Under the pieces are notes generated by a model. The model was not told the origin of the DNA, searched no databases, and saw nothing but the letters and a program-made list of their open reading frames with translations. Positions 7,270-64,000 of a stretch of DNA of 64,000 nt are shown piece by piece. The stretch spans positions 186,001 through 250,000 of the IMG/VR virus record IMGVR_UViG_3300033995_001164. One strand, written 5' to 3'. A program made the translations under genes and the position numbers. The first letter of the stretch is position 1. Each line of letters starts with the position of its first letter.

Positions 7270-7364
7270 TTTTATTTTTAATTATAAATAGTTTAAATTA
7301 TCTTATTAATTTTATTTTGTGAATTACCATAATATCATTATCTTTGTACTCTAAAATAATAGAT

Positions 7365-9094: not shown

Positions 9095-9095
9095 A

Positions 9096-9545: not shown

Positions 9546-9549
9546 AATA

Positions 9550-12833: not shown

Positions 12834-14336
12834 TTACCCTAATTTACTCATTAAATCTTTCATTCTAAGGAATTGAGGATTTTCATAAGTTTTTGATTCA
12901 AGTAGAGTAGTCGATGAACCTGTAGATACTGTTTTTTGAATTTTGTTTCCTACTGATTCACTAATTGATTTTTTAATTTCTGGTTTAGATAATTCACCTT
13001 TAATTGACTGATAAAGATTTTTAGATTCTTTTAAAGTTTCAACATCGTCAAATCTTCTTAAGATATTAATTTTCTCTTTTTTAGTAGTCGAATGTTCAGT
13101 GAACAATCTTGTTGCGTAAGCTAAGTTTGAATTAAATATTGCAACTTCATTAAGTTTTTCTCTGAAAACATTTAACGCTTTTCTATACTCTTCATTTTTC
13201 TCTCTTAACAACGAAACTTCTTCAGTAGATTCTTTATAAACTTTATTACGATTTGGTGTAATACCTTTTCTTAATCCTCTACCTTCTTTGGAACCCATTC
13301 CATAAGTGTGGGCAGCTTCTTTAGTTTCCTCTTTTTCAAAAGCTTTTCTTTTTAAAGTGTCACCTTGTTTAGTAGTGTAATCTTTATCACCTTTAAAGGT
13401 TTTAGATTTATCACCCTTATTCATTCCGTAATCACCTTCTTTTGTTTCTACCTTAACAACTTTGGATTTTCCCCCCATATTTGCCCCTGCTTTGTATTCG
13501 AATTTAGGTTTACCTGTCCCTACTGATTTAGGCCCTTGTTTTCTTTTTTCATTGAATCCTCCAGCCACTTTTTTAATTTCAGTTTTACCTGGTCCATTTC
13601 CAATTCCAACACCTTTAGGTTTGATTGTTGATTTCGCTTCTCTCACAGCTCTTCTTGAATTGTAAGACTCTTCTAAATCCTCTTCTTCGTCGTCCATCAT
13701 GTCATCTTCAAATTCGATTTCAAACATAATTTCTTCATCATCTTGGTCTAAATCGATGTCATTCGTACTACCACCCGCAAAAATCGCATCAAGTACGTCA
13801 TCTGTAGTTTGGTCATCCATTTCACCTAATTCATCAAATTCCATGTCGTCCTCTTCGTCTAACATTTCCTCTTCTTCTTCAGATTCCCCAAGTTTAACAA
13901 GATACTCAGAGTCATTATCGTTATCAGTTAAATGAATGTCATTACCGTCTTTTTGAACTATAATACCATCTTTTTCACCCATAGCTTTAAACACTTTAAG
14001 AATTTCTTCGTCAGAAGCTCCTGTTAAGTCAATTGGACTTTCATCAGAATCCATGTCCATGTCAAAATCCATGTCCATATCATCTTCATCTTCGTCTTCA
14101 TTATCAATGTCCATATCTAAGTCGATGTCTTCTTCATCAGAATCCATATCGTCTTCCACATCCATATCTAATTCAATCCCGTCTTCTTCTTGTTCAGAAA
14201 GAGATTCTTTTACTAGCTGATTGATTTCTTCCTTCATAGTTGAAGCAAGTATTCCTTTTGCGTTTTCGGCTATAGCTTCTTCAACTTGTCTCATTTGAAT
14301 AAGTGCCTCCTGTACTAATTTATTATTTTCTTGCAT
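12834..14336 (-). CDS. Prohead core scaffolding protein (gp22-like)
   Basis: Very acidic middle, coiled-coil C-terminus (LNEVAIFNSNLAYATRLF); lies between protease and capsid genes. Confidence 0.7.
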   Translation of the reverse strand: MQENNKLVQEALIQMRQVEEAIAENAKGILASTMKEEINQLVKESLSEQEEDGIELDMDVEDDMDSDEEDIDLDMDIDNEDEDEDDMDMDFDMDMDSDESPIDLTGASDEEILKVFKAMGEKDGIIVQKDGNDIHLTDNDNDSEYLVKLGESEEEEEMLDEEDDMEFDELGEMDDQTTDDVLDAIFAGGSTNDIDLDQDDEEIMFEIEFEDDMMDDEEEDLEESYNSRRAVREAKSTIKPKGVGIGNGPGKTEIKKVAGGFNEKRKQGPKSVGTGKPKFEYKAGANMGGKSKVVKVETKEGDYGMNKGDKSKTFKGDKDYTTKQGDTLKRKAFEKEETKEAAHTYGMGSKEGRGLRKGITPNRNKVYKESTEEVSLLREKNEEYRKALNVFREKLNEVAIFNSNLAYATRLFTEHSTTKKEKINILRRFDDVETLKESKNLYQSIKGELSKPEIKKSISESVGNKIQKTVSTGSSTTLLESKTYENPQFLRMKDLMSKLG

Positions 14337-14699: not shown

Positions 14700-15416
14700 T
14701 TATTTTCCTAAAAAGTCGTTTAATTTTTTCATTAAATCAACTGACTTCTCAACATAATCGTCTTTTTGTTTATGTTTTTTTTCTTCGTCTAAATTTTCCT
14801 CATATTTTTCTCTATCATCCGCATTTGAAAATAAATAAGCTCCCGGTGTGGACGGTGACGATACTAAGTCAAAACAGATTAATTCAAAATCTTCCTGAAC
14901 TTCATTTCTTTCTCCAACTTTTTTTAACGACCCAACCCCTCTTGATGATATACCTAAGGTTACTCCTTGTCTCATTAAGTTCGCTGCTATATCCCCTTTT
15001 GTGGATACAACTCCTGATTCGTGAAAACCCGGAGAAGTTAATAATTTTAGTTTTCCCATTAAAATATTTCGGTCCCACCATATTTCAGTGATAATATGGG
15101 ATACTCGGTCTAAATCGATTAAAGATGACTCAGGGTGGTTTAATTCGGATGTTGATAAACCTTTGTTAATTGTTTTTTGATAATTGTCCGCTTCTCTTCT
15201 TAATATCTTTTCAGGGTATGAACGACCATTTCTATTTGGTGTATCGTATTTTTGTAAAACAGCATAAAATTCAAATGGGTTTCTATAATCCATGTCTTTA
15301 GCTTCTTGTAAAACTTTTTCATTATGTTTGTCTTTAGGAGACACCCAACCGGCATCCGCTTCAACTAATATACCATGTCCTACTTCAGTCGCTTCTAATA
15401 TTCTTAATTGTTTCAT
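14700..15416 (-). CDS. gp21: Prohead core protease, T4 gp21 family
   Basis: NRNGRSYP, ELNHP, LGISSRGVGS, DLVSSPSTPGA motifs. Confidence 0.92.
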   Translation of the reverse strand: MKQLRILEATEVGHGILVEADAGWVSPKDKHNEKVLQEAKDMDYRNPFEFYAVLQKYDTPNRNGRSYPEKILRREADNYQKTINKGLSTSELNHPESSLIDLDRVSHIITEIWWDRNILMGKLKLLTSPGFHESGVVSTKGDIAANLMRQGVTLGISSRGVGSLKKVGERNEVQEDFELICFDLVSSPSTPGAYLFSNADDREKYEENLDEEKKHKQKDDYVEKSVDLMKKLNDFLGK

Positions 15417-16750: not shown

Positions 16751-19567
16751 TTAGGAATTTAGTAACTTATCCAATTCTTTTGAAATTTCTCCTAAAGATT
16801 CTTGTCCATGACCTAAATTAATCATTTGAGCCCCTTCTATTAAGTTATTCTCAACCAACATATTTAAGTTATTAATTCGAGATTCCGGGGTTATTTCCGC
16901 TTCTCCTCCGACTGGTGGAGGTGGAACTGTTTCTTCCCCTGCCGGTGGTAATTCTTCGCCGCCTAAATCGGAGGTTTCAAATTCTCCCCCGCCAAATGAT
17001 GGAGGTGGTTCAGATGTTTCAGTTGAAGCTGTTTGGGTTCCTCCTGAGGTACTACCATAAAGTTTATCGATATTATCAAATAAACCTGTTTTAGTGATAA
17101 CCGTAGCAGTTGCCTTAAGCTCTTCCCCTACCGCTCTTTCAATTCTTTGTTGTTGTAAATCCAAACGAACTTCTTCATCTGACCATCCAAAAATATGTTT
17201 CTTAGCCCATGTTGCTGAAGTCGCTTGAATACCATTTCCTGGGTCCGCAACTAAATCTTTGTATAATAAAACTTTTTCTTTCCAAACGTCAATTTTTAAT
17301 AAATCTGCTTGGGTTGATGGATTACTTAATCCTAATGTGAAATTATCCAATTCGTCTTCAAATCCTAATAAAAATAAATGGACGATTGCAATTTTATTTA
17401 ATTCTGCAACCATACTTTTTTGAATTCTATTAATTGTTCTAGCAAAACGAATATCTTGTAAAGATAAATTTTTACCATCTCCTACAACTTCTTCAAAACC
17501 TAAAAATGCTTTAGGTACACGAAGAGCTGTTAATAGTTTCTTTTGGATATATTCAATATCGGCAATTTCTGAAAGGTTGGTCGCCCCTGGTAATGTAGTA
17601 ATCGGGTCAGGTGCTGAAGGGTCTCTAACTGGGATGAAATAATCTTGGTCTACCGCCATTTGGTTAAACCTCATGTCAACATTACCTGTTTTATTATCTA
17701 CAACCTGTTCTCTTTTAAATTTATTTGCAACTCTTTGTACGTATGCCTCGACATCGTCATCGTTCATATTACCAACAAATACTTTAAACATTCTTCTTTC
17801 AGGTGCTCTTGATGTACGATAAATTAACATCGCATCTTCTGATAGTAATAATTGTTTCCAAATTCTTCTTGCTTTCTCTAACATAGAAGTACCATAAGGA
17901 AGTTTTCTGTCGTCACCTAATAATCTAAAATGACCAATTTCCCATGTTTGGAATTCCATGTTTTTAATCTTCCAAGTAAAATGAAGAGATTTTTTGTCTT
18001 TATCTAATTCTTTAGTTATGTCAGTCGATATTTTTGCACTTACCCCTACTTCATGTCTTTCAATCTCGATTGTTGGTAATTGTTGAACACCTACAATTCC
18101 TTTTTCAGGGTCTAATTTTAAAAAAATAAAGTTATCACCATACTTGCAAGTGTTTCTTGTCCACATTGGTAGGTTAGTGTTAATGTCAAGTGAGTTATTA
18201 AACAAGTCGGCTAATACCCCTTTTATTCTGTTTGACTCTGAATAAATTTGTAATATAAACCCATCTTCATTTGTTGTGGTTGATTCTTCCGCATAAATGT
18301 CTAACGCTGCTGATATTTCAGGAGTGTTATGGGAAAATATAGTATCTGTTGCAAAGTTTTTATATCCGGGAACTGTTAAATCATAAACAGGAATAACTCC
18401 ATTAGGTTCTATTGACACTATTTTATGATTCAAATTAATTGAAGACCCCACACTTTTTGACGTAGAGTATTTTGATTTTTCAATACCATAAGCGTCGAGG
18501 AATGTTGACCAATCTTTGTAACCGGAATTTGTAATATCTCTTTGTAATTTCCTGTATGAAACATTCAACTTTAAAGATGTTTTTTTCAAAGATTTCTCAA
18601 TTCTCGCCGTTTCAATGATATTGTCAAAAGGTATCGAAAAATATGCTGGATTTTTATTACCTTTACGTTTTCCACCCCAAGTCATTTTACCTTTACGTTT
18701 GGCAACTTCAGACATTTTTAATCTATACTCAGGATTAGACCATAATTTTTCATTATTCAATCTTGCATGATATGCTCTATGTTCTGAAATATCCATAATT
18801 AATAAATTTTCAGGAAGATTATTTTTCCCATTAAAATCAATATGGTGTACTTCTTCGTTGTCTTTTATTTCTACTTCATTATACCATTTTGCAATTAAAC
18901 TATGTTCTGATACCCACCCATGGTGTCCTTCATCTTTATTGCAAGTGTAAACCCAATTATAGTTTTGGTTATTATAAAATGATTTACGATAAAACGGCAT
19001 CATAGAATCCCCGTCTTTGAGGTTCATAACTCTCTCAAATGACCCATCTCTTTTCATTAATTGGTGTTCCCATGTTGTGATAATAAATGAACCATCGTCA
19101 AAAATAACTTTATATGTCATTTCATCTCGAGTGTAATGTGCATTTCGAGCCTTTGAGGGTACGACTTTTTTCAAATTGTGGTCATACGAATAAGTGATAA
19201 ATTCGTAATCTCTGCCTTTGTCAGCAAGTTCTTTTATGGTTATAAAACCATCAGGAGTTGCTATTTTTGTGTCTCCGGCGATGCAATATTCCATACTTTC
19301 ATAATCGTATTGTGCCGATAATCTTGACGGTTCATAATATATTGCCTGAGAATATAAATTATTCTCAACTTTTGCCCATTGATTGGTTAAATAAAAGGTT
19401 TGTTGCGCCTGTAACTTTTCTTTCTCGTATTCTTCTTTACTTTTGGTACGTAGTAATTCCTTTTTATCAAACTTAAAAGTTGGATAATCTTGGTTTAATT
19501 GAGAATTAGGCCCAAATGTTTGGGATAATCTCTGCCATACCGTCATATTATTTTGTTGTTCGCTCAT
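16751..19567 (-). CDS. gp20: Portal protein, T4 gp20 family, interrupted by an intein
   Basis: TPEISAALDIYAEE, PYGTSMLEKARRIWKQLLLSEDAMLIYRTSRAPERR, DYFIPVR, DIEYIQKKLLTALRVPKAFL. Confidence 0.93.
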   Translation of the reverse strand: MSEQQNNMTVWQRLSQTFGPNSQLNQDYPTFKFDKKELLRTKSKEEYEKEKLQAQQTFYLTNQWAKVENNLYSQAIYYEPSRLSAQYDYESMEYCIAGDTKIATPDGFITIKELADKGRDYEFITYSYDHNLKKVVPSKARNAHYTRDEMTYKVIFDDGSFIITTWEHQLMKRDGSFERVMNLKDGDSMMPFYRKSFYNNQNYNWVYTCNKDEGHHGWVSEHSLIAKWYNEVEIKDNEEVHHIDFNGKNNLPENLLIMDISEHRAYHARLNNEKLWSNPEYRLKMSEVAKRKGKMTWGGKRKGNKNPAYFSIPFDNIIETARIEKSLKKTSLKLNVSYRKLQRDITNSGYKDWSTFLDAYGIEKSKYSTSKSVGSSINLNHKIVSIEPNGVIPVYDLTVPGYKNFATDTIFSHNTPEISAALDIYAEESTTTNEDGFILQIYSESNRIKGVLADLFNNSLDINTNLPMWTRNTCKYGDNFIFLKLDPEKGIVGVQQLPTIEIERHEVGVSAKISTDITKELDKDKKSLHFTWKIKNMEFQTWEIGHFRLLGDDRKLPYGTSMLEKARRIWKQLLLSEDAMLIYRTSRAPERRMFKVFVGNMNDDDVEAYVQRVANKFKREQVVDNKTGNVDMRFNQMAVDQDYFIPVRDPSAPDPITTLPGATNLSEIADIEYIQKKLLTALRVPKAFLGFEEVVGDGKNLSLQDIRFARTINRIQKSMVAELNKIAIVHLFLLGFEDELDNFTLGLSNPSTQADLLKIDVWKEKVLLYKDLVADPGNGIQATSATWAKKHIFGWSDEEVRLDLQQQRIERAVGEELKATATVITKTGLFDNIDKLYGSTSGGTQTASTETSEPPPSFGGGEFETSDLGGEELPPAGEETVPPPPVGGEAEITPESRINNLNMLVENNLIEGAQMINLGHGQESLGEISKELDKLLNS
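18326..19285 (-). mobile_element. Intein (320 aa) with HNH homing endonuclease in the portal
   Basis: Starts CIAGDTKIATPDG (block A) and ends VYDLTVPGYKNFATDTIFSHN followed by Thr; internal EVHHIDFNGKNNLPENL. Confidence 0.92.
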
Positions 19568-19606: not shown

Positions 19607-21364
19607 TTACCCGCCAAATAACCACCCGTATTTTTGATAGTCTTCTCTCGTTGACCCCTGATTCATTGGATGTTGTCTACCCATTTGAGGCACCATCGGG
19701 TTAAAGAATTCTGAGGAGTTTTTATTTTCAGTCACAGCTGTCGACCAAGAGTTTAACATTGCTCTTGTGTGATTAGTAACTTTTTCTAGTGATTGGAATG
19801 ATTTCTCAGCAACATATATTGCCATAGCAATACTCATTATACAATCATCGTGATGCATTTTTTGGTGGTCAGGTCGTCCATTAATATAAACAAATGTGTT
19901 CATTTCATTATACAAACGACTCGAATAAATTCTAAACTTATGTCTCATCGCTTCTTCAAACGAGGCTATAATTTGAACCCTTTTTGAGTTAAAGTTAATT
20001 CCCGGGATTTTTTCATTTATTTTTGGGTCGTATTTCCATTTATTGGTCATATCAACACCATCAACATATAATCCACCTTGGTAATTCATTTCTTGGAGTT
20101 TTCTTGCGGTTGCAACTCCCATACCACCAGTTAAATCAACAACACAAAAGGCGCTATACATGGTTCCCCATTTATAAGCTATTTCTGCCAATACATCTGG
20201 TGGAATTTTTCCAACATATTCCAATACTTGTTCACGGGCGTCAAAATCAATTATTTCAATACTTGAGAAATCTTCGGAATCTCCTCGAGATACATCAACA
20301 CCCATTACATATTTATGACCATTTTCCGGTTCTTTCCATATCCAAAGACCTCCACCCATCATTTTAGCCTGCGGGTCTTTAACTTGGTTTTTAGAAATAT
20401 CTTGCATCATATCCGAATCAAATACATTATCTCCGGAACCTAAAAAGTTACATTCTAACTCTTGTGCAACTTTACGTCTATCATATTTTAATTTCTTAAC
20501 CATCCCTTCAAACCATGATGAACATGGTTTATACCCTTGTTCTATATAGTTTGTCACTATTGAATGGTCTCTTTCAAATGGGTTAGGCGTTGATAGGTTA
20601 ATTACAACCTCATCAAGATTATATTCTTCACGATTTAATAAGAAATGGACTAAGTCATTTGTTTTCACCATATATAAATCTTTTGTATATCGTGGGTCAC
20701 GATGCCAAAACATTTCAGTCACTTTGAAGTCATTCATACCTCTAAGTGATTGGTCATAAATTTCATAGTAGATTGGGTCGTATCCGTTAGGTGTGGAAAC
20801 AACTATAACCTTACCCCCTGTGGATAAGGATGCCATACAAGCAGCCCAAAAATCTCCATCCGCCTCAATATAAGCCGCCTCATCAAATATCAGAATAGTT
20901 GGGGTATAACCCCTAAGAGCATCTCGAGAGGTTGCAACTGCTTTAACTTCACATCCATTAGTTAGTTTAAAGTGACGTTGAGCATTTTTTTCTTGAGAGA
21001 ATCCAACACCAACCCACGCGGGCCATTGTTCAGTAAACCCTCTAACTTTATTAGCCATCTCCACCGCAGTATCTAACTTGTTGGCAATGATTAATATTTT
21101 TTCAGGTTTAGTTTTTTTTGCAAAGGCCAATTTTTTTGATGCCCAAGCGGCAGTTACGGTCGATACACCCGCTTGTCGATACTTTAGTGCAACATTTTCA
21201 TTGTGATTATCATAATCCTCAATAAGTGTAATTTGGTCGGGGAATAGGTCTAACGGTACGTATTTTGAGACCGTATTATCGTATGTCTGTAAATAAGTAC
21301 GAAGTGCGTAGGGAGTATTCCTCATGCACTTCGTTACTTCAATAATTAATTGTTCTTTATTCAA
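19607..21364 (-). CDS. gp17: Terminase large subunit, T4 gp17 family
   Basis: KYRQAGVST (Walker A), ILIFDEAAYI (Walker B), STPNG, GVDVSRGDSEDFS nuclease motif. Confidence 0.93.
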   Translation of the reverse strand: MNKEQLIIEVTKCMRNTPYALRTYLQTYDNTVSKYVPLDLFPDQITLIEDYDNHNENVALKYRQAGVSTVTAAWASKKLAFAKKTKPEKILIIANKLDTAVEMANKVRGFTEQWPAWVGVGFSQEKNAQRHFKLTNGCEVKAVATSRDALRGYTPTILIFDEAAYIEADGDFWAACMASLSTGGKVIVVSTPNGYDPIYYEIYDQSLRGMNDFKVTEMFWHRDPRYTKDLYMVKTNDLVHFLLNREEYNLDEVVINLSTPNPFERDHSIVTNYIEQGYKPCSSWFEGMVKKLKYDRRKVAQELECNFLGSGDNVFDSDMMQDISKNQVKDPQAKMMGGGLWIWKEPENGHKYVMGVDVSRGDSEDFSSIEIIDFDAREQVLEYVGKIPPDVLAEIAYKWGTMYSAFCVVDLTGGMGVATARKLQEMNYQGGLYVDGVDMTNKWKYDPKINEKIPGINFNSKRVQIIASFEEAMRHKFRIYSSRLYNEMNTFVYINGRPDHQKMHHDDCIMSIAMAIYVAEKSFQSLEKVTNHTRAMLNSWSTAVTENKNSSEFFNPMVPQMGRQHPMNQGSTREDYQKYGWLFGG

Positions 21365-27408: not shown

Positions 27409-27578
27409 AATTTTATTTTTTAATTCAAATTTATTTTATACCTTTGTATTATTCAAATAATATACCAAACCAAAAAATATGTCAATATGTCAGGTTAAAA
27501 AAAACTTACTGACAATTTGTCTAAAAATTAGGATAAGAATAAAATTTGATACACCTTTGTAAAATAAAATTAGAAACT

Positions 27579-29594
27579 ATGAACGACTTAATGGACGACA
27601 ACGACAAATCAGGGAACAAAGCACAAAAACAAGCTATGGATACAAACACACCTGTATTAGACAACTTCAGTAGAGATTTAAATAAACTAGCTGAGGCGGG
27701 TAAATTAGACCCGGTTATTGGTAGAGATGCCGAGATTTTGAGAATCGCACAAATCCTTTCTCGTAGAAAAAAGAATAACCCTATTATCATAGGTGAACCC
27801 GGATGTGGTAAAACCGCATTGGTTGAAGGTTTGGCTATGAAAATTGTGAGTGGAGAATGTCCAAGAAACTTAGTGGACAAAAGAATCGTGAACCTTGATT
27901 TAACTTCAGTTGTTGCTGGTACAAAGTATCGTGGACAATTTGAGGAAAGAATGAAAGTGATTATCGAGGAACTTAGTGCTAATCCAAATATCATTGTGTT
28001 TATCGATGAGATTCACACATTGGTTGGTTCCGGTAATTCTTCAGGTTCAATGGATGGTTCAAACATCTTCAAACCGGCACTTGCCCGTGGAGAGGTTCAA
28101 TGTATTGGTGCGACAACTCTTGATGAGTTCCGTAAGAACATTGAGAAAGACGGAGCCTTGGAAAGAAGATTCCAAAAAGTAATTGTGGAGCCATCCACAG
28201 TTGAAGAAACAATCGAAATCCTTAAGAATGTTCGTGATAAATACGAATCATACCACAAAGTGTTGTATAGTGACGAAGTTGTGGAAACTTGTGTTAAGTT
28301 GGCTGACCGTTACATCACCGACCGTGAGTTCCCGGATAAAGCATTTGACATCTTAGATGAGGTTGGTGCTCGTATGCAAACCGAGATTAAAGTTCCTGAT
28401 GTTATTGAGGAATTAAAAAAGAAAGCCGCTGAGATTAAGATTGAAAAAATGGAAGTGGTTAAAAAACAAAACTACGAACAAGCAGCACAACTTAGAGATA
28501 AGGAGAAAAAGTTATTGATTAAACTTGAGGCGGAAAAAGATAAGTTTGCAAAACAAATGGATTTGGAGAAACAAACTATTGTTCTTGAAACCGTATATCA
28601 AGTTGTGTCAAGTATGACTAAAATCCCTGTGAGTAAAATGGATGCTGATGATTCCAAAGCGTTGATGAATTTAGATAAATCAATCATGGGTAAAGTGATT
28701 GGTCAGGATGCTGCTGTTGTTAAGATTGCAAAATCAATCAAGAGAAACCGTTTGGGTATCAAAGACCCTAACAGACCTATTGGTTCATTTATTTTCTTAG
28801 GTTCAACCGGTGTTGGTAAAACTCACTTGGCCAAACAATTAGCTAAAGAGATGTTTGGAACAGAAGATTCACTTATCCGTGTGGATATGTCAGAATACCA
28901 AGAGAAACACACCATCTCTAAATTGGTTGGAGCACCTCCGGGATATGTTGGTTACGAAGAAGGAGGTTTATTAACTGAGAAAGTTAAAAACAAACCATAT
29001 TCTGTAATCTTATTTGATGAGGTTGAAAAAGCTCACAAAGATGTTTTCACGGTATTACTTCAAATATTAGATGATGGACACGTAACCGATAGTTTAGGTA
29101 GAAAGATTAACTTCAAGAATACCTTAATCATCCTTACATCTAACTTAGGTGTTAAGAAATTACAAGACTTCGGTACTGGTATTGGATTCTCTAATAACTC
29201 TTACGCCGACGAAGAAGCTAAGAAAGAAATCTTGATGAAAGAGATGAAGAATTTCTTTTCTCCTGAGTTCATTAACCGTATTGATGACACTATTGTCTTT
29301 AATTCATTAACTCCTGAAGATATCGATAAAATCACCGATATTGAGTTAAAGAAATTAATGACTCGTCTTGGTGAGATGAAATACACCGTAACCTACGATG
29401 ATGAGGTTGTTAAATACCTATCTAAAATTGGATACGATGAAGTATATGGTGCAAGACCATTGAAGAGAGCAATCCAAGACAAAATTGAGGATTTGTTATC
29501 CGAAGAAGTATTAACCGGTAAAATGGTTGAGGGTAAATCCTACCAAATCAAAATGAAGGGTGAGGACATCACAATTCAGAAAAAAGGAAAATAA
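27579..29594 (+). CDS. clpC: ClpC-type AAA+ unfoldase lacking the N-terminal Clp-repeat domain
   Basis: GEPGCGKT/DEIH and GSTGVGKT/DEVEK ATPase modules, single UVR M-domain, TGIGF ClpP-docking loop. Confidence 0.9.
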   Translation: MNDLMDDNDKSGNKAQKQAMDTNTPVLDNFSRDLNKLAEAGKLDPVIGRDAEILRIAQILSRRKKNNPIIIGEPGCGKTALVEGLAMKIVSGECPRNLVDKRIVNLDLTSVVAGTKYRGQFEERMKVIIEELSANPNIIVFIDEIHTLVGSGNSSGSMDGSNIFKPALARGEVQCIGATTLDEFRKNIEKDGALERRFQKVIVEPSTVEETIEILKNVRDKYESYHKVLYSDEVVETCVKLADRYITDREFPDKAFDILDEVGARMQTEIKVPDVIEELKKKAAEIKIEKMEVVKKQNYEQAAQLRDKEKKLLIKLEAEKDKFAKQMDLEKQTIVLETVYQVVSSMTKIPVSKMDADDSKALMNLDKSIMGKVIGQDAAVVKIAKSIKRNRLGIKDPNRPIGSFIFLGSTGVGKTHLAKQLAKEMFGTEDSLIRVDMSEYQEKHTISKLVGAPPGYVGYEEGGLLTEKVKNKPYSVILFDEVEKAHKDVFTVLLQILDDGHVTDSLGRKINFKNTLIILTSNLGVKKLQDFGTGIGFSNNSYADEEAKKEILMKEMKNFFSPEFINRIDDTIVFNSLTPEDIDKITDIELKKLMTRLGEMKYTVTYDDEVVKYLSKIGYDEVYGARPLKRAIQDKIEDLLSEEVLTGKMVEGKSYQIKMKGEDITIQKKGK

Positions 29595-30885: not shown

Positions 30886-32025
30886 TTAATACATGTCATC
30901 CAAATTAAATAAGGTATTTTGATATAAAAAATTGTTAAATTCTTCTTCTTCCAATTCAAGTTTTTTAAATAATCCGGTATCTTTAGTTTTGACAATTAAT
31001 TTAACTGACATATTACCCGGATTAAACGATTCAATTTGAAAAATAATATTGTCGTCTTTAGGGGTTTCATACCAAGTTTTTAATTTATATTTAGATACAA
31101 CTCGGTTTCTAAATTCAACAAAGTCTTGAATTGTATATTCTTCGTCACTTTTTTCATCTAATTTTTCAATAATCTTTTCAAATTGTCTTGTAACCTCATT
31201 ATTAAATGATACTGAATCGAAATATTGTTCATCTTGAAACTCGTAAATTTTCTCATACCAACCACCAGGAGTTGACCCTCCAAAAGACTTATTTATTATT
31301 TTTGTAACAATCTCTTTGGCATTAGAATTAAATAAATTTAGTTGTAACGCACCCAAATATAAATCGGCAAGAGTGATTTCCACTTCATCCATATTGTAAT
31401 TAAGGTTAATACCATTTTCCTCTAACGGTTTATTAAATTCATCTTCGATTGCCTTTTTTGCGACAGTATTCATTTCGTGCTCTTTTTCAGATTGAAAATC
31501 CCCGAGGATATAATCAATTTCATTAGGAAATAAATCAAGTAACATTTCGGATAATTCTTGTCTGTATTCTTCACTCTCGAGATTAAATTCTTTTTCAGGT
31601 AATATTGTGGATGCGATGTCCTTAAGAGTTTCTTTATTCTCATCGTTCAATTCATAATACACATTGTACCCTTCTTTAAAATCTTGTTCTATTTGATATG
31701 AATCTTGAAAATCATATCCATTGTATGAATTAATAGCTTGCATGAACCAAACATCTGATTCGTCCATGTCAATTTCTTCTAAAAATTCTTTATCATCTTC
31801 AAATTTAATGGTTATAATAGATTGACCTAAAGGTTCCTTAGTTTGAATATAGTCTATAGTATTATCGATATTATATAACTCGTCAGTACTAATTCTACCT
31901 TTAGAAAAATTTCTAAGACCGACAACTAAGTTCTTATCTTCCTCTTTTTCAGTGTCTTGCTCTGTCTGTATGACCCTTCTGATAATATGATTAAGGTCTG
32001 ATTCAGTTAATTTTATTACTTTCAT
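30886..32025 (-). CDS. Leader-bearing acidic protein
   Basis: Likely start MKVIKLTESDLNHIIRRVIQTEQ at 32025. Confidence 0.55.
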   Translation of the reverse strand: MKVIKLTESDLNHIIRRVIQTEQDTEKEEDKNLVVGLRNFSKGRISTDELYNIDNTIDYIQTKEPLGQSIITIKFEDDKEFLEEIDMDESDVWFMQAINSYNGYDFQDSYQIEQDFKEGYNVYYELNDENKETLKDIASTILPEKEFNLESEEYRQELSEMLLDLFPNEIDYILGDFQSEKEHEMNTVAKKAIEDEFNKPLEENGINLNYNMDEVEITLADLYLGALQLNLFNSNAKEIVTKIINKSFGGSTPGGWYEKIYEFQDEQYFDSVSFNNEVTRQFEKIIEKLDEKSDEEYTIQDFVEFRNRVVSKYKLKTWYETPKDDNIIFQIESFNPGNMSVKLIVKTKDTGLFKKLELEEEEFNNFLYQNTLFNLDDMY

Positions 32026-32056
32026 TAAAATGATTTTACAATAAATACTTTTTTTG

Positions 32057-32087
32057 TTTGGAATTTCAATATTTATGTTTATCTTTG
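32057..32087 (+). promoter_or_regulatory. Bacteroidota sigma70-type promoter for tmRNA
   Basis: TTTG (32057-60), 19-nt spacer, TATCTTTG (32080-87). Confidence 0.75.
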
Positions 32088-32101
32088 TACCATAATAATA
32101 G

Positions 32102-32511
32102 GGGGATGAAATGGAATTGACTGACATATCTACTTATTTAGGGCACGTAGTGAGAAGTTTCCTATCACTTAAATCTATGGATGACAAAATTATAAATGGC
32201 AACATTTTAAACAAAATGGCTCTAGTAGGTCTTGTACGTCAAGATGAGCTTGTGAACGTAGCGTAAGCAAACACACATTGGGGTCGACGGATATATGTAC
32301 CTTGCAACAGAAATATCTTAAGGTGTGATACCACCCGAAGAGTGTCAAGGTCTCGTTTGAGGGTCTACCTATTAAAGTGAACCTCCCACAGTTGTAGGTA
32401 ATGATGGAAAAATTAAAACCTTCTTATTTGTCAGTTGAGAATTAATTGAATAAACGTGTAGACCTAAACACTTAGGATGGACAACACCCGATTTCGAAAT
32501 CGGCATCTCCA
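32102..32511 (+). ncRNA. ssrA: tmRNA; tag reading frame 32198-32266 encodes (A)GNILNKMALVGLVRQDELVNVA
   Basis: 5' GGGGATG pairs with 3' CATCTCC-A including the G3.U70 pair; GGAATTGAC D-loop; GGAC...TTCGAA T-arm; resume context ATAAAT-GGC. No encoded CCA. Confidence 0.9.
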
Positions 32512-45599: not shown

Positions 45600-45986
45600 T
45601 TATTTATTTTCTATAAGTTCATCTAAAACAGCCGGAATGTATTGTTTAAACAATTTAATTGCATTCATTTTAAGTTCAATCATTTCCTTAATATTGTCAG
45701 ATAATTTTTTAATCTTATCGTATTCATCCGGAGTTAATAAGAACACTTCTTTTGGTATAGTGTTATATGTCTTCCCTATAATTGGACTTGTTATTTCAAT
45801 AATATTGGTATCTCCATCGTAATAATACGGTGTTAACCCCTGAGACTTAAATTTAAGTAAACTCATTGGAGTTATATCAAAATCTAATATTTTTCTATTC
45901 TCCGGAAGTTTTGGTTTATCCATCATTTCTTTGTGTTGGTTTAATATATCGTCTTTTTCTTCTTCGGTAATTATAAATTTTCTCAT
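45600..45986 (-). CDS. Leader-bearing protein
   Basis: MRKFIITEEEKDDILNQHK; late-type motif upstream. Confidence 0.6.
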   Translation of the reverse strand: MRKFIITEEEKDDILNQHKEMMDKPKLPENRKILDFDITPMSLLKFKSQGLTPYYYDGDTNIIEITSPIIGKTYNTIPKEVFLLTPDEYDKIKKLSDNIKEMIELKMNAIKLFKQYIPAVLDELIENK

Positions 45987-59920: not shown

Positions 59921-60032
59921 GAATAAGTGTTAAATGAAAAAAGAAGGTATTACTACCTTCTTTTTTTTTTAGATAAGATAAACACCCCCTTGTTTTTAAA
60001 AATCTAATTTATATAATAGAGTTTTATATCTA

Positions 60033-60689
60033 TTATGTTGTAACCACAGGTTTAATTTTATTATAAACATCTGTCGCTTTTTTGTTAAAACCATTAAACA
60101 TTCCACAAACTATTCCGGATAATTGATTTTCTAAACTTGAGATAAATGCGGTGTCTTTAACGGCGCCTCCCAAAGCATTTCTTAAGAATGAATACCCTTG
60201 ACCTTCAAGTCCAGCTTTTTCTCCTAACATTTGAACAACCGCCTCAGATAATGATTCAGCAATTAATTTAGTTAATTCTTTACAATCTTTAAGAGCTAAA
60301 GCTAATCTTCTTGGGTCTGAAACTATAAATGATGTTATTGCATTTGTAAAAAAATTACTTAACCCTAACTTTCCAACTAAAGATTTAACCATTGGTTCAA
60401 CAACTGTTTGAGCAATTCCACTCAAAGCATTACTCCCAAATAATTTTCCTAAAACGTCCATCAATTGTTCGTTTAAGATTTTATTCTCACTTAAAAAATT
60501 AATCTCTTCAAGAAGAGAATAAGCAATTTTTTCTTGTTTCTTTTTAGGTAATTTATTAAAATTTTTAATATTATCTTCCGATTCAACAATCATTAATATT
60601 CTACTTCTAACTAAATTCTCTTCAATTAAAGTTTTTTCTTGATTATCTTTCGCTTCTAATATCGCTCTTTTTATTTGTTTTTCTAACAT
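60033..60689 (-). CDS. Hypothetical protein, probably virion-associated
   Basis: MLEKQIKRAILEA leader-like start; in operon with leader-bearing genes. Confidence 0.55.
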   Translation of the reverse strand: MLEKQIKRAILEAKDNQEKTLIEENLVRSRILMIVESEDNIKNFNKLPKKKQEKIAYSLLEEINFLSENKILNEQLMDVLGKLFGSNALSGIAQTVVEPMVKSLVGKLGLSNFFTNAITSFIVSDPRRLALALKDCKELTKLIAESLSEAVVQMLGEKAGLEGQGYSFLRNALGGAVKDTAFISSLENQLSGIVCGMFNGFNKKATDVYNKIKPVVTT

Positions 60690-60699
60690 AACTTATTGA

Positions 60700-61623
60700 T
60701 TATTTCAATCTCCATTTAGCGTCTTCACCATAAGATAATGGCCCACCCGTTCCACCTCTTAATGTTTTAATATAATTGTCAACAATACTAAAAACTCCAC
60801 CCCATTTACCGTTAAATTGGTTGGCACAAGCCTGAACTTGAGATTTTAATGAATCAAATTGACTTTGAGGTATGTCTTCTCTTTTAGTTTTCCAATAATC
60901 ATAATATTGTTTCACTTTATCTCGACACACTTTTTTATCTTGTTCTCCGGCAGCTGGTTTATACATGATTAAACCTCCAGGGAAATATTGTTCACTACCT
61001 TGAACATTAACTTTTTGATAAGTCCCAGATGCTAATTGTTCAGGGGTTAGTTTTTCAACATATCCTTCGTTTTTTATCCATTGATTGATAAAAGCTTGTT
61101 GTTCCGGAGTATAACCACCTTGTTTTGCAGTATTAACCTTTAATTTATATAAATCGTATTTTGGATGTTTTTGGTATAATTGAGAAAGTTCTGTATCTGT
61201 TACGGCAATGTCAGCTCTTTTTTTCCATCCGTATTGTTCCAATTCTCTTGCAATGTCAGTATCTACTGTTGCTTTTTGAGATGCTTGTGTCGCTTGTTGA
61301 GAATCCATTTGAGCAATCTTATCACATTTCCAATTACCACTTTTACTTCCATCTCTAAATTTATAAGTCATATCACCATAAAAGTCGATTTCTTTACCAC
61401 TTTTAGTAGTTGCACGATAAACAAATTTAGTTTTATCAGGATTTGTAAATAATTGACCATTAATTAAACATCCCGCAGCTTTAGCCTTTCTTAATATTTC
61501 TTCACCCGTGTTTGAAACTGGCGTGACAGGTACAATAGGTTGTATTTGTTCCTTCATCAATGATTTGTGCATTGATAAAATTTCATTCTTTTCGGATTCT
61601 TCTATAATATATCTTTTCTTCAT
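60700..61623 (-). CDS. Leader-bearing protein
   Basis: MKKRYIIEESEKNEILSMHKSLMKEQ. Confidence 0.6.
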   Translation of the reverse strand: MKKRYIIEESEKNEILSMHKSLMKEQIQPIVPVTPVSNTGEEILRKAKAAGCLINGQLFTNPDKTKFVYRATTKSGKEIDFYGDMTYKFRDGSKSGNWKCDKIAQMDSQQATQASQKATVDTDIARELEQYGWKKRADIAVTDTELSQLYQKHPKYDLYKLKVNTAKQGGYTPEQQAFINQWIKNEGYVEKLTPEQLASGTYQKVNVQGSEQYFPGGLIMYKPAAGEQDKKVCRDKVKQYYDYWKTKREDIPQSQFDSLKSQVQACANQFNGKWGGVFSIVDNYIKTLRGGTGGPLSYGEDAKWRLK

Positions 61624-61631
61624 TTTTAAAA

Positions 61632-62696
61632 TTAAGTATTAATCAATGATAATGAATCGTCCGCATCTGCTTGAACTGAGAATTCATCTGTTTGTGGTTT
61701 AACCGGTTGTTTAGATGCACAGATTTTTGTAACATCAGCATCAGTAAATGAGGTAAACCCTTTAGATGCTAACGCGGCTTTAGTCTTTTTACCAAATTTT
61801 CCGTCAGGAGTTAATCCTAAACATCCTTGAACTTTTGCAATTGTATTTGATTTACATCCATAGGAATAAGTTCCTGAACATGGTTTGTAAGTACTTTTAC
61901 CGGGTGTTTTACCACCTGTTTTATTACCACCTCCGCCACTACTAGTGTCTTTAATAGTTAATAAAGAATCCTCAACACAATTTCTAATTGGTCTGTATAT
62001 TTGTTTCCATTCAGACTCCGAATCAATGTCGATATCTAAATCATCAAATAAATCACCACTATCGGAATGTGCGTTATAATATTTAACTAACGCACAGAAA
62101 TCAGATGCAGTACCGGATTCTAATTTTTTGAATGCTCCAAATAATTTTTCTTCATCAGTTCCTCCTTGAAATCCGTAACTATCATTAACAATTGCGTCTT
62201 CAATATCATCAGTAATTGAACGTAAATCAGTATCTTGTAATTTTCGTTGTAATTTGGCAATTTTAATACCCTCAGATGAACACATTTCAAACATTTTTTT
62301 CACTTTGTTCATTCCCGTATCTTTTGTTACAAACCAATAAACTAATGGTAGTAACGCAAGTCCGGCTGCTCCTCCTACAATTGCTCCAGCTGCTGTCGCC
62401 CCAACCCCAAGAGATGATAACGCACCTACTAATCCCGTACCTTGTGACGCGGCAATTGCAGTTGCACCAGCGATTTTAGGTAACGCAACCCCCGCAGCCC
62501 CTAAAGCACCCGACGCACCTAATCCTGCTCCCGCAGCGGCTCCTAATCCAGCTCCTGCAACGGTTGGTGACACGTATTGTTCTTCAATAATTCCAATTTC
62601 TTTTTTATTTTCGTTCAGAGTTTTTGACATATCGTAAGACATCATCAATTTAACTCTTTCTAACGCCTCCGCCGGGCTATATTTTGGTTGTACCAT
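61632..62696 (-). CDS. Leader + Gly-zipper/hydrophobic + annexin-like + PG-binding protein
   Basis: AGAGLGAAAGAGLG...LALLPLVYWF; GGTDEEKLFGAF...YYN...GDLFDDLD; GCKSNTIAKVQGCLGLTPDGKFGKKT. Confidence 0.55.
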   Translation of the reverse strand: MVQPKYSPAEALERVKLMMSYDMSKTLNENKKEIGIIEEQYVSPTVAGAGLGAAAGAGLGASGALGAAGVALPKIAGATAIAASQGTGLVGALSSLGVGATAAGAIVGGAAGLALLPLVYWFVTKDTGMNKVKKMFEMCSSEGIKIAKLQRKLQDTDLRSITDDIEDAIVNDSYGFQGGTDEEKLFGAFKKLESGTASDFCALVKYYNAHSDSGDLFDDLDIDIDSESEWKQIYRPIRNCVEDSLLTIKDTSSGGGGNKTGGKTPGKSTYKPCSGTYSYGCKSNTIAKVQGCLGLTPDGKFGKKTKAALASKGFTSFTDADVTKICASKQPVKPQTDEFSVQADADDSLSLINT

Positions 62697-62729
62697 CTTT
62701 AAAGTATTTTAATTATAAATATGTTGTTA

Positions 62730-62978
62730 TTACCAAATCTGATTAGCAGCACCTCGGGTTAATCCAGTTTGCCATTTTTGACCTGATTTCATTAGTGGAT
62801 TTGCTTTACCTCGAGTTAATGTATATGTATCTTCCCATTTAGGTATTGACCCTCCACCACCTCCAGATGAGGGAGTTGATGCCGCAGCATCGTCTTGTTC
62901 TTCCATTTCTTCCCTTGGTTCACTATCTGAAGTGTATTTTTTAAAGAAGTCGATAAGTGCATTAATATCTCTAACCAT
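62730..62978 (-). CDS. Hypothetical virion-type protein
   Basis: EMEEQDDAAA...KWE...TRGKANPL...W.TGLTRGAANQI internal repeat. Confidence 0.55.
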   Translation of the reverse strand: MVRDINALIDFFKKYTSDSEPREEMEEQDDAAASTPSSGGGGGSIPKWEDTYTLTRGKANPLMKSGQKWQTGLTRGAANQIW

Positions 62979-63010
62979 TTTTAATATTTTTTTGTTATTT
63001 AAATAAATAG

Positions 63011-63337
63011 TTAATAAAACTCATTTTTTGGTAATTGGAGTGGGTTAATTAAATAATATTCATTTAAGAATATGATTAGTTCATCTTCATCTAATTCGAT
63101 TGTCTCATGTTCAAAAATTCCCCCTTCAAAATCGTCCTCATCATCTCCGAAAAAATCGAATGTTTCTGTGACAAGGTCAAATCCGTATTCCTCAACAATA
63201 CTATAATCGATTGTGTCATTTCTTAACACATCTTCTTCATCATCTATAGTTCTAAATGATACCTCAATCATATTAGTCTCTCCGTTCAAATAATATGATA
63301 TAATTTCTTTAATTTCCATAATAACTTTTATAAACAA
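63011..63337 (-). CDS. Hypothetical acidic protein
   Basis: 108-aa ORF. Confidence 0.55.
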   Translation of the reverse strand: MFIKVIMEIKEIISYYLNGETNMIEVSFRTIDDEEDVLRNDTIDYSIVEEYGFDLVTETFDFFGDDEDDFEGGIFEHETIELDEDELIIFLNEYYLINPLQLPKNEFY

Positions 63338-63385
63338 ATATGTTAAAATATCTCAAAAGACAATATTTTTATCACTAAATCGCAT

Positions 63386-63412
63386 AAAAAACCCCTCCGG
63401 TTAGAGGGGTTT
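63386..63412 (-). terminator. Intrinsic terminator
   Basis: AAACCCCTC-CGGTTA-GAGGGGTTT. Confidence 0.65.
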
Positions 63413-63424
63413 ATTAAATTAGTT

Positions 63425-64000
63425 TTAAAGTTTAATATCACCACCAACATTAATCATTTTTCTTATTTCGTTTTCATTATGTTTTTTAGATAATGGTGTT
63501 TGCATAATATTTAAATTTTCTCCCACACTTTTTAATTCACCAAAAGTCTTAATTGGGCAATTTTGGATAAATAAATTTTCTACCGATTCTAATTTCCCCA
63601 AAGACTTTAAATTAAGGCAATTCATAATTCTTATATATTTTGCCGATTTTATATTACCCAAAGATTCTAAATTAGGACAATGTTGGATATCTATCATTTC
63701 GGCGAATGTTACAACACCTAAATTTTCAATTGATGTCTCAGAAATCACTAAAATATTTACATATTTTAACATATTTAATGATTTTAAATTAGGACAATTA
63801 CGAATTTCTAACGATGTAACACTTTTTAAGTTTTCTAAAGATTTAAAATTACAATTATTTAATACAAGTCTTCCATCAACTGATGTTAAATCACCTAAAG
63901 TATTGGTTGAGTTAAGAATTAAATCTCCTTTAGACCCATCTTTAATATATTTTTGTATTTTCTTTTGTTCAGCGATTTGATGATTTTTAGAACGTTCCCC
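63425..64000 (-). CDS. Leucine-rich-repeat protein, 5'-truncated by the window
   Basis: Frame open to base 64000; repeats such as CPNLKSL, LESLGNIKSA, LKSLGKLESV, IKTFGELKSV. Confidence 0.75.
   Translation of the reverse strand, partial: GERSKNHQIAEQKKIQKYIKDGSKGDLILNSTNTLGDLTSVDGRLVLNNCNFKSLENLKSVTSLEIRNCPNLKSLNMLKYVNILVISETSIENLGVVTFAEMIDIQHCPNLESLGNIKSAKYIRIMNCLNLKSLGKLESVENLFIQNCPIKTFGELKSVGENLNIMQTPLSKKHNENEIRKMINVGGDIKL

What the first reader, a model, noticed from the sequence alone, without database searches (positions are those of the whole stretch)
61632..62696. Annexin-like repeat fused to a glycine zipper and a peptidoglycan-binding domain
After the leader come a long Gly/Ala hydrophobic stretch, a segment like an annexin repeat (GGTDEEKLFGAF...Y....GDLFDDL) and a PG-binding domain. 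A weaker annexin-like segment is in 9550..10188. Annexins bind membranes in a Ca-dependent way (established). Inference: an ejected head protein that bridges peptidoglycan and inner membrane to help form the DNA conduit.
Basis: partly seen in the sequence, partly recalled or inferred. Interest (0 to 1): 0.6.

Follow-up and report, generated by a model that had tools for sequence, protein, structure and literature searches.

The report
Phage annexin-repeat, peptidoglycan-binding membrane protein
A 309-kb freshwater jumbo phage encodes a protein that joins a cleavable-looking leader, a glycine/alanine-rich membrane segment, one true annexin repeat and a cell-wall-binding domain, which shows that annexin repeats occur in phages and points to a protein delivered to the host envelope.

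Summary
Residues 44-123 are an 80-residue segment that is 54% Gly+Ala and nearly uncharged. It ends in a conserved transmembrane helix.

Residues 152-238 are a single annexin repeat. The protein itself misses Pfam Annexin, but a profile of 129 relatives hits PDB annexins (E 2.4e-38) and 60 of the 129 hit Pfam Annexin. The AlphaFold model (pLDDT 89.5) superposes best on annexin I domain 1 (Z 7.4, 2.1 A, 73/73 residues). The most conserved positions are the GT of the Ca loop, the acidic ligand D223 and W230.

Residues 273-330 are a divergent PG_binding_1-like domain. The "weaker" segment in 9550..10188 is supported only by profile-profile comparison (89%).

The "ejected head protein" reading is inference with circumstantial support:
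- At least 15 ORFs of this phage share interchangeable N-terminal leaders ending in (L/I/V)-x-E, the T4 gp21 cleavage motif.
- The phage has a gp21-type protease.
- Leader cargoes are wall-directed (LysM, PG-binding, TseH-like amidase) and lack signal peptides, whereas the endolysin has no leader.
- A co-varying Cys pair suggests an oxidising location.

The protein is a new phage-borne variant of the annexin family.

The parts
61632..62696 (-). Whole gene, 354 aa (P0001), including the stop codon
   Evidence: more than 613 homologues
62580..62696 (-). N-terminal leader, residues 1-39. It is an amphipathic helix (type A leader, ...ALERVKLMMSYD..SKTLNEN...) ending in I-E-E|Q, with a second L-N-E site at residues 27-29.
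   Evidence: A11, L12, L17, M19, Y21, D22, E29, N30, E39 and Q40 are invariant. Leader HMM E 1.3e-18. The [LIVMFY]xEQ motif is enriched 67 against 6 expected.
62328..62567 (-). Gly/Ala-rich, nearly uncharged hydrophobic segment, residues 44-123, with G-x3-G-x3-G motifs at 48, 52 and 104
   Evidence: 54% G+A, one Lys; composition conserved but sequence variable
62328..62396 (-). Conserved transmembrane helix, residues 101-123 (Pro kink, YW belt, followed by TKD)
   Evidence: hydropathy 1.8; invariant L116, P117, L118, Y120, W121
61941..62327 (-). Central seven-helix domain, residues 124-252: two extra N-terminal helices plus the annexin repeat
   Evidence: AF2 pLDDT 89.5, pTM 0.84; 132 clusters of relatives at 50% identity
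61983..62243 (-). Single annexin repeat (helices A-E), residues 152-238
   Evidence: VIA Z 7.4, rmsd 2.1 A, 73/73 residues to annexin I domain 1; profile-to-PDB annexins
62151..62174 (-). AB loop with G-G-T-D-E-E (residues 175-182). It is the annexin GxGT Ca-loop carrying a 6-residue insertion peculiar to this clade.
   Evidence: G179 in 117/129 and T180 in 126/129; insertion seen in the HMM alignment
62022..62036 (-). D-x-D-x-D in the D-E loop (residues 221-225). D223 aligns with the bidentate acidic Ca ligand of annexins.
   Evidence: D221 110, D223 124, D225 107 of 129; alignment to the annexin 'D/E-TSG' position
61881..61940 (-). Gly/Lys/Thr-rich linker, residues 253-272
   Evidence: pLDDT below 50; variable among homologues
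61707..61880 (-). Divergent PG_binding_1-like domain with four invariant Cys, residues 273-330
61635..61706 (-). Variable acidic tail, residues 331-354
9898..10083 (-). Degenerate annexin-like segment (residues 36-97) of the 212-aa protein at 9550..10188. That protein also has a type D leader and a C-terminal PG_binding_1-like half-motif.
   Evidence: hhalign probability 89.4%, E 2.1e-6; MMP-propeptide and annexin sub-threshold hits
14700..15416 (-). gp21-type prohead serine protease (Peptidase_S77), the candidate enzyme for leader removal
   Evidence: PF03420 E 1.4e-22
6136..10188 (-). Block of four leader-bearing genes just downstream of the capsid gene: 6136..7269, 7964..9094 (TseH-like), 9096..9545 (PG-binding-like), 9550..10188
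60033..63337 (-). Tightly packed same-strand gene run that holds the target: 63011..63337, 62730..62978, target, 60700..61623 (type D leader), 60033..60689. The first three are syntenic in a related contig.

Best explanation
Shown. The gene encodes a modular envelope-directed protein of a T4-like, roughly 309-kb freshwater jumbo phage. Its parts, in order, are:
- a hydrophilic N-terminal leader;
- an 80-residue Gly/Ala-rich hydrophobic segment ending in a conserved transmembrane helix;
- a seven-helix domain whose core is one true annexin repeat, with the Ca-loop GT, the acidic ligand position (D223) and a D-x-D-x-D loop conserved;
- a flexible linker;
- a divergent PG_binding_1-like domain.

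Inferred. The leader works like a T4 capsid-targeting propeptide. It takes the protein into the prohead, and the phage's gp21-type protease removes it after I-E-E39. This leaves the Gly/Ala segment at the new N-terminus. On infection the protein leaves the virion and reaches the periplasm. There the hydrophobic N-terminus inserts into a membrane, the annexin repeat binds phospholipid head groups through Ca2+, and the C-terminal domain holds peptidoglycan. The protein would thus tether wall and membrane at the entry site. Whether it lines or only stabilises a DNA conduit is open.
For: Domains:
- The annexin call rests on the family profile against PDB annexins, Pfam Annexin in 60 of 129 relatives, the AF2 model at pLDDT 89.5 and annexins on top of two unbiased structure searches.
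- Ca-site positions are the most conserved columns.
- The PG-binding call rests.
- The hydrophobic segment is described.

Leader and packaging:
- At least 15 ORFs of this genome carry leaders of four interchangeable types. The same leader types head the annexin domain in other phages.
- Leaders end in [LIVMFY]-x-E-Q in 67 of 122 family representatives against 6 expected. The rest have (L/I/V)-x-E at the same place.
- T4 gp21 cuts after L/I-X-E, and 10-19-residue N-terminal propeptides target proteins into the T4 head (PMC9026906).
- The phage encodes Peptidase_S77. Its capsid protein has a T4-like I-N-E|A site.
- Four leader genes lie directly beside the capsid gene.
- Leader cargoes are wall-directed and lack signal peptides: TseH-like amidase, PG-binding-like and LysM. 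The canonical endolysin (PG_binding_1 + GH19) has no leader.

Location:
- C139 and C201 co-vary: 108 sequences have both, 7 have neither, 6 have one. Four more Cys are invariant in the C-terminal domain. Together these suggest an oxidising compartment.
- The flank on the annexin side of the hydrophobic block is the more positive one. This argues against ordinary insertion from the cytoplasm with the C-terminus outside.
Against: - There is no direct evidence of virion association, cleavage or ejection.
- No cultured relative exists and no PHROG family matches.
- The gene lies in a run flanked by metabolic genes, not in the main structural module.
- The leader is 40 residues, longer than T4's 10-19, and shows no detected sequence similarity to T4 capsid-targeting sequences.
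- (L/I/V)-x-E is a short motif.
- Packing a protein with an 80-residue hydrophobic segment inside a T4-type head has no precedent known to me.
- The protease-leader complex prediction gave no answer.
- Ca2+ and lipid binding are inferred from conserved residues only. P0001's AB loop carries a 6-residue insertion and reads Q-G-G-T rather than G-x-G-T.
- The disulfide is inferred from covariation, not from model coordinates.
Confidence: 0.5

Rival explanations
1. The protein is a membrane protein made in the infected cell. It is inserted by the host machinery with the leader in the cytoplasm and the annexin and PG-binding domains in the periplasm. It would tether membrane to wall for superinfection exclusion, lysis timing or envelope stabilisation, as T4 Sp, Imm and RI do, and would never be packaged.
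For: A long hydrophobic segment could act as a signal anchor. Conserved Cys and a PG-binding domain fit a periplasmic location. The gene lies outside the main structural module.
Against: Charge bias puts the more positive flank on the annexin side, contrary to an N-in/C-out topology. Many relatives have the same leader and annexin domain with no hydrophobic segment and no signal peptide, so they could not reach the periplasm this way. This reading also does not explain the conserved (L/I/V)-x-E end of the leaders.
Confidence: 0.25
2. The protein acts on the cytoplasmic face of the membrane. The annexin repeat binds the inner leaflet to organise a membrane-bound phage process, and the PG_binding_1-like fold has a role other than binding wall.
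For: The positive-inside rule places the annexin side in the cytoplasm. Relatives without a transmembrane segment or signal peptide are cytoplasmic by default. Eukaryotic annexins are cytosolic (PMC10882027 abstract).
Against: The Cys pair co-varies and four Cys are invariant in the C-terminal domain. Other proteins with the same leaders carry LysM, PG-binding and TseH-like amidase domains, which have no substrate in the cytoplasm. Cytoplasmic free Ca2+ is low (general knowledge).
Confidence: 0.1
3. The protein is a tail- or baseplate-associated entry protein, in the manner of a tape measure or tail tip, rather than a head-internal one. It would be released with the tail tube to insert into the inner membrane, like T5 Pb2.
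For: Gly/Ala-rich hydrophobic segments and wall-directed domains are typical of ejected tail proteins (general knowledge). It has the same envelope-directed domain logic as the best explanation.
Against: This reading does not account for the leaders shared with genes beside the capsid gene or for the protease-type motif. At 354 aa the protein is far too short for a tape measure of a jumbo myovirus. No similarity to tail proteins was found.
Confidence: 0.08
4. The annexin likeness is chance, produced by a helical, acidic, low-complexity segment.
For: P0001 alone has no Pfam Annexin hit. Foldseek E-values are about 1. VIA Z-scores are below 8.
Against: The family profile hits every repeat of many annexins, with the best single repeat at E 1e-6. 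60 of 129 relatives hit PF00191, the best at 4.4e-9. Annexins fill the top of two searches of 48,161 chains. The conserved columns coincide with the annexin Ca site.
Confidence: 0.02

Closest known systems
Bacterial single-domain annexins (Cytophaga hutchinsonii and other Bacteroidota; Kodavali et al. 2014, PMC3894181)
   Same: Both have one annexin repeat, sometimes with transmembrane segments and extra domains. Both occur in aquatic Bacteroidota-associated settings, and their similarity to eukaryotic annexins is remote but significant.
   Different: This protein is encoded by a phage; the 2014 survey found no annexins in viruses. It is fused to a leader, a Gly/Ala membrane segment and a PG-binding-like domain. 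Two extra N-terminal helices are probably pinned by a Cys pair. It has a D-x-D-x-D loop instead of D/E-T-S-G. The close clade is absent from 185,579 species genomes.
Eukaryotic annexins (for example annexin A1 domain 1, A5, A6; Pfam PF00191)
   Same: Both have the five-helix repeat fold, the GT of the AB Ca loop, and an acidic ligand at the equivalent D-E loop position.
   Different: This protein has a single repeat rather than a four- or eight-repeat disc, and its AB loop carries a 6-residue insertion. It is membrane-anchored and probably extracytoplasmic. Identity is 15-20%.
T4 internal proteins IPI-III and Alt with capsid-targeting sequences, processed by gp21
   Same: Both have an N-terminal propeptide ending in L/I-x-E. 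Both phages have a gp21-family protease, and many unrelated cargoes share the propeptide.
   Different: Here the leaders are 22-60 residues in at least four sequence types, with no detected similarity to T4's. The cargoes are directed at the envelope rather than the cytoplasm. Packaging and cleavage are untested.
Ejected channel-forming proteins of other phages (T7 gp14/15/16, P22 gp7/16/20, T5 Pb2)
   Same: They combine membrane-inserting segments with a wall-directed module in proteins delivered at entry (general knowledge).
   Different: No sequence or fold relation was found. Those proteins carry muralytic enzymes, not a wall-binding domain plus an annexin repeat.
PG_binding_1 cell-wall-binding domains of endolysins (phiKZ gp144, Burkholderia AP3 endolysin)
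   Same: The fold matches at Z 5.4-5.6 and the D-G-x-F-G-x-x-T motif is shared.
   Different: No catalytic domain is attached. Four invariant Cys are present. The match is below Pfam's threshold for P0001 itself.

Membership tests
Annexin (PF00191) | Direct match of the protein to the Pfam Annexin model | tested here: not met
   No hit at E <= 10 for P0001 or its central domain. PF00191 searched over the whole phage genome did not hit this gene.
Annexin (PF00191) | Homology to annexin repeats shown through the protein's own family | tested here: met
   The profile of 129 relatives hits annexin VI at E 2.4e-38, all repeats matched, best single repeat 31.7 bits. 60 of 129 relatives hit PF00191, the best at 4.4e-9.
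Annexin (PF00191) | Five-helix (A-E) repeat fold of about 70 residues | tested here: met
   The AF2 model has pLDDT 89.5. The best of 48,161 chains is annexin I domain 1 (Z 7.4, rmsd 2.1 A, 73/73 residues), and 9 of the top 11 are annexins or annexin fusions.
Annexin (PF00191) | Type II Ca site: G-x-G-T loop plus an acidic residue about 38 residues downstream | tested here: inconclusive
   G179, T180 and D223 are near-invariant, and D223 aligns with the annexin ligand. However, P0001 reads Q-G-G-T with a 6-residue loop insertion. Metal binding was not measured.
Annexin (PF00191) | Core of four (or eight) repeats | tested here: not met
   One repeat per protein, and only one significant match in the genome. 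This resembles bacterial single-domain annexins.
Annexin (PF00191) | Ca2+-dependent binding of acidic phospholipids | not testable with these tools
   Needs a liposome assay.
PG_binding_1 (PF01471) | Pfam match above the curated cut-off | tested here: not met
   13.2 bits against a cut-off of 23. 7 of 23 close homologues reach E <= 0.01.
PG_binding_1 (PF01471) | Family profile and fold match to solved PG-binding domains | tested here: met
   Profile hits: 7rum endolysin E 2.9e-4, then 1lbu and 5nm7. Fold hits: Z 6.1 (4xxt), 5.8 (SleB), 5.6 (AP3 endolysin), 5.4 (phiKZ gp144).
PG_binding_1 (PF01471) | Binding of peptidoglycan | not testable with these tools
   Needs a sacculus pull-down.
T4-type capsid-targeting propeptide | N-terminal propeptide ending in L/I-x-E, with a gp21-family protease in the same genome | tested here: met
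   I37-E38-E39 and L27-N28-E29 are present. The motif is conserved across the family. Peptidase_S77 is encoded. The rule is taken from PMC9026906.
T4-type capsid-targeting propeptide | Incorporation into proheads and cleavage during maturation | not testable with these tools
   No cultured relative exists. The complex prediction gave no answer.
Glycine-zipper membrane segments (Pfam Gly-zipper families) | Match to a Gly-zipper Pfam model | tested here: not met
   No family at E <= 10 for residues 1-130. Only the G-x3-G-x3-G motif and the composition are present, so 'glycine zipper' is a description here, not a family membership.

The most novel reading that the evidence does not exclude
This T4-like jumbo phage, and a large uncultured clade around it, uses a set of interchangeable protease-removable leaders to load its head with a suite of envelope-acting cargo: an annexin-repeat tether, LysM and PG-binding proteins, a TseH-like amidase and an LRR protein. 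It injects this cargo into the host periplasm, as an effector delivery system inside a capsid. The annexin protein, with its Gly/Ala N-terminus exposed by cleavage in the manner of a viral fusion peptide, would insert into the inner membrane and use Ca2+ to clamp membrane to wall around the DNA entry site.
Probability: 0.3. Interest if true: 0.8.

Novelty: new variant of a known kind. Interest (0 to 1): 0.6.

Why it matters
Annexins were long held to be eukaryotic, then found in a few bacteria, and a dedicated survey found none in viruses. Here a large family of at least 132 clusters at 50% identity, mostly viral, carries a single annexin repeat with its Ca-site residues conserved. In this phage the repeat is wired to a membrane segment and a wall-binding domain.

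If the leader is a capsid-targeting propeptide, uncultured T4-like jumbo phages package envelope-directed proteins. That would change the picture of how large myoviruses cross the envelope. It would also supply a sequence signature (leader plus L/I-x-E) for finding ejected proteins in metagenomic phage genomes.

The isolated 124-330 fragment is small, well predicted and directly testable for Ca2+-dependent lipid binding and peptidoglycan binding.

Tried and rejected
- Direct Pfam and PHROG scans of P0001 and its pieces gave nothing usable beyond a weak PG_binding_1 hit.
- A profile of close homologues only (A2) found no annexin in the PDB. Diversity was needed.
- PF00191 searched over the genome gave only a 12-bit hit elsewhere, and control genomes give the same kind of hit.
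- Foldseek against the PDB gave E-values of about 1, although its high-probability rows are annexins.
- megablast and tblastn against 50,697 phage records found no match for the region, for P0001 or for the TseH-like neighbour. A type B leader protein matched only an uncultured 642-kb phage.
- No PHROG family matches any of the 129 relatives.
With the close alignment it found 5 viral contigs and no convincing match in species genomes.
- Context look-ups of two distant relatives gave short contigs of unannotated genes.
- The T4 late-promoter word TATAAATA is not enriched: 19 matches against 12 +/- 4 expected. The sigma-70 and terminator scan was at chance level.
- The complex prediction of prohead protease with the leader gave no answer, which is neither support nor evidence against.
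- The protein atlas feature search could not be reached, twice.
- The 98-aa ORF at genome 282251..282547 has a short 14-bit match to helices B-C of the family profile. I judged it too short to call.
- No other genetic code was needed.

Full report
**Context.** The window is bases 186001-250000 of a 309,177-bp IMG/VR virus record rated complete, with 31.6% G+C. It carries T4-type head genes:
- a Gp23 capsid protein at 11005..12792;
- a Gp20 portal with an intein at 16751..19567;
- a large terminase at 19607..21364;
- a Peptidase_S77 prohead protease at 14700..15416.

The nearest capsid proteins in cultured phages are those of Flavobacterium and Microcystis phages, at about 42% identity over about 56% of the query. 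The other near match is an uncultured 484-kb phage. Near-identical DNA occurs in at least 24 lake-water metagenome runs from 2020-2024. This is therefore a recurrent freshwater jumbo myovirus. Its host is not known; a Bacteroidota host is only a guess from these neighbours.

**The gene.** ORF 61632..62696 on the minus strand encodes 354 aa. It has more than 613 homologues at 60-87% identity in metagenomes, all unnamed. An alignment of 23 of them shows four things:
- The N-terminal 40 residues are conserved and end in an invariant E39-Q40.
- A Gly/Ala-rich stretch follows, variable in sequence and length.
- A conserved transmembrane helix covers roughly residues 101-123.
- The central domain (residues 124-252) is almost invariant, and the C-terminal domain has four invariant Cys.

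**Hydrophobic segment.** Residues 44-123 hold 24 Ala and 19 Gly out of 80, with a single charged residue and three G-x3-G-x3-G motifs. Only the last 23 residues reach classic transmembrane hydropathy. No Pfam glycine-zipper model matches, so "glycine zipper" describes the composition here and is not a family membership.

**Annexin repeat: sequence evidence.**
- P0001 does not hit Pfam Annexin at any threshold.
- A profile of close homologues sees no annexin in the PDB.
- An exhaustive profile search found 132 clusters of relatives at 50% identity.
- A profile of 129 of their domain segments puts annexins at the top of the PDB list. Annexin VI scores E 2.4e-38 with all repeats matched, and the best single repeat scores 31.7 bits at E 1e-6.
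- 60 of the 129 relatives hit PF00191 on their own, the best at 4.4e-9.
- P0001's clade carries a 6-residue insertion in the AB loop, which explains the direct miss.

**Annexin repeat: structure evidence.**
- With this alignment AlphaFold2 gives pLDDT 89.5 and pTM 0.84.
- A search of 48,161 chains that does not depend on Foldseek ranks annexin I domain 1 first (Z 7.4, rmsd 2.1 A, all 73 residues aligned, protein residues 152-238). Nine of the top eleven are annexins or annexin fusions.
- The earlier low-confidence full-length model had already given annexins as its top four.
- Foldseek E-values are not significant, but its high-probability rows are annexins.

**Ca-site residues.** The four most conserved columns of the family are G179, T180, D223 and W230. 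G179-T180 is the GT of the annexin Ca loop. D223 aligns with the acidic residue that closes the type II Ca site. D221 and D225 are also conserved, giving D-x-D-x-D. Calcium and lipid binding remain inferred.

**PG-binding domain.**
- The signal is weak for P0001 alone.
- The family profile hits PG_binding_1-bearing structures at E 2.9e-4.
- 7 of 23 homologues hit PF01471.
- The fold matches PG-binding domains of an amidase, SleB, the AP3 endolysin and phiKZ gp144 at Z 5.4-6.1.

**The second segment.** The 212-aa protein at 9550..10188 is not significant against the annexin family HMM. A profile of its own 35-member family aligns to it with hhalign probability 89%, E 2e-6, over 62 columns. Its C-terminus resembles the PG_binding_1-like propeptide of matrix metalloproteases. 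It probably has the same logic, leader plus degenerate annexin-like repeat plus PG-binding motif, without the membrane segment.

**The leader.** P0001 is one of at least 15 ORFs in this genome whose N-termini match leader HMMs of four types. In other phages the same leader types head the annexin domain, with or without a hydrophobic segment, so the leaders are interchangeable modules.
- They end in [LIVMFY]-x-E-Q in 67 of 122 full-length representatives, against 6 expected by shuffling. The remainder have (L/I/V)-x-E at the same place.
- T4 gp21 cleaves after L/I-X-E, and short N-terminal propeptides target internal proteins into the T4 head (PMC9026906).
- This phage's capsid protein has a T4-like I-N-E|A site, and the acidic scaffold-like protein has L-S-E-Q.
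- Four leader genes lie just downstream of the capsid gene.

**Leader cargoes.** The cargoes identified are a TseH-like amidase, PG-binding-like domains, LysM and LRR. None has a signal peptide. The canonical endolysin (PG_binding_1 + GH19) has no leader.

**Location.** Three observations bear on where the protein acts:
- C139 and C201 co-vary across the family: 108 sequences have both, 7 have neither, 6 have one.
- The flank of the hydrophobic block on the annexin side is the more positive one.
- Together these favour delivery to an oxidising compartment by a route other than insertion from the cytoplasm.

**Limits.**
- All of the location and packaging argument is circumstantial.
- The gene run that holds P0001 is flanked by metabolic genes.
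- No cultured relative or PHROG family exists.
- The protease-leader complex prediction gave no answer.
- I could not read model coordinates to check the Cys-Cys distance.

**Novelty.** A 2014 survey of bacterial annexins found them mainly in Bacteroidota and none in viruses (PMC3894181). The paper searches run here turned up no report of a phage annexin. The nearest ESM Atlas fold clusters are 57-85% viral, and one has 32% of its members in Pfam Annexin. BFVD holds one 801-aa protein from an uncultured Caudovirales phage with this domain. The finding is thus a new, phage-borne variant of the annexin family with a new architecture.

**Confidence.** Confidence in the domain identification is about 0.95, and in head packaging with proteolytic processing about 0.5. 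Confidence in a role at the DNA entry site is about 0.3.

Noticed in passing
window 16751..19567 (-): The T4-type portal gene (938 aa) carries an intein: Intein_splicing PF14890, E 2.3e-11, residues 109-414, ahead of the Portal_T4 match at 414-803.
   Followed up: no
window 27546..29594 (+): The phage encodes a ClpB/Hsp104-type double AAA+ protein (AAA_2 E 4e-68, AAA_lid_9, ClpB_D2-small).
   Followed up: no
window 7964..9094 (-): A 376-aa protein has a type D leader and a TseH-like domain (PF25218, 34 bits, over the cut-off), which is a type VI secretion effector family. It has no signal peptide and lies next to the capsid module.
   Followed up: partly
whole genome G000; window 2235..2579, 6136..7269, 7964..9094, 9096..9545, 9550..10188, 30886..32127, 45600..45986, 60700..61623, 61632..62696, 63425..64780: At least 15 ORFs share N-terminal leaders of four sequence types (A..KLMMxYD..SKTLxEN; B..RLTESDLxRIVKRV; C: MKHILNNLSxEEKN; D..EEKNRILxxHES), each ending in (L/I/V)-x-E, mostly followed by Q.
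   Followed up: partly
G000:C1:29954-30301 (-), = L002:2464-2811: A 115-aa protein consists of a type B leader followed by a LysM domain (PF01476, 26 bits, over the cut-off).
   Followed up: partly
G000:C1:287125-287286 (-): A 53-aa ORF consists only of a type C leader (HMM E 8e-36). In other phages this leader is followed by the annexin domain, so this may be a remnant or a split gene.
   Followed up: no
window 11005..12792 (-): The capsid protein is 595 aa, but Pfam Gp23 matches mainly residues 332-580, and tblastn to relatives comes in two pieces covering about 56%. This suggests a large insertion or a divergent N-terminal half.
   Followed up: no
window 12834..14336 (-): A 500-aa extremely acidic protein lies just upstream of the capsid gene. 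It is scaffold-like by position, and its N-terminal helix ends in L-S-E-Q at residues 46-49.
   Followed up: no
window 10219..10899 (-): A 226-aa gene sits between the capsid gene and the leader genes. By eye it has an HNH-like C-terminus (..HVDHKLP..N..) and is possibly a homing endonuclease. No Pfam family was found at E <= 0.01, and it weakly matches the type D leader HMM.
   Followed up: no
G000:C1:265997-266809 (+), = L011:16997-17809: The canonical endolysin has PG_binding_1 (E 1.5e-11) plus Glyco_hydro_19 (E 1.4e-9) and no leader.
   Followed up: partly
window 60000..64000: Near-identical DNA is present in at least 24 lake-water metagenome runs from 24 studies, 2020-2024. No RNA run holds it.
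   Followed up: no
window 62730..62978 (-) and 63011..63337 (-); L007 6429..7576: Two small genes lie upstream of the target: an 82-aa protein with a Gly run and a basic C-terminus, and a 108-aa very acidic protein. Both keep their order in a related viral contig at 81% identity.
   Followed up: no
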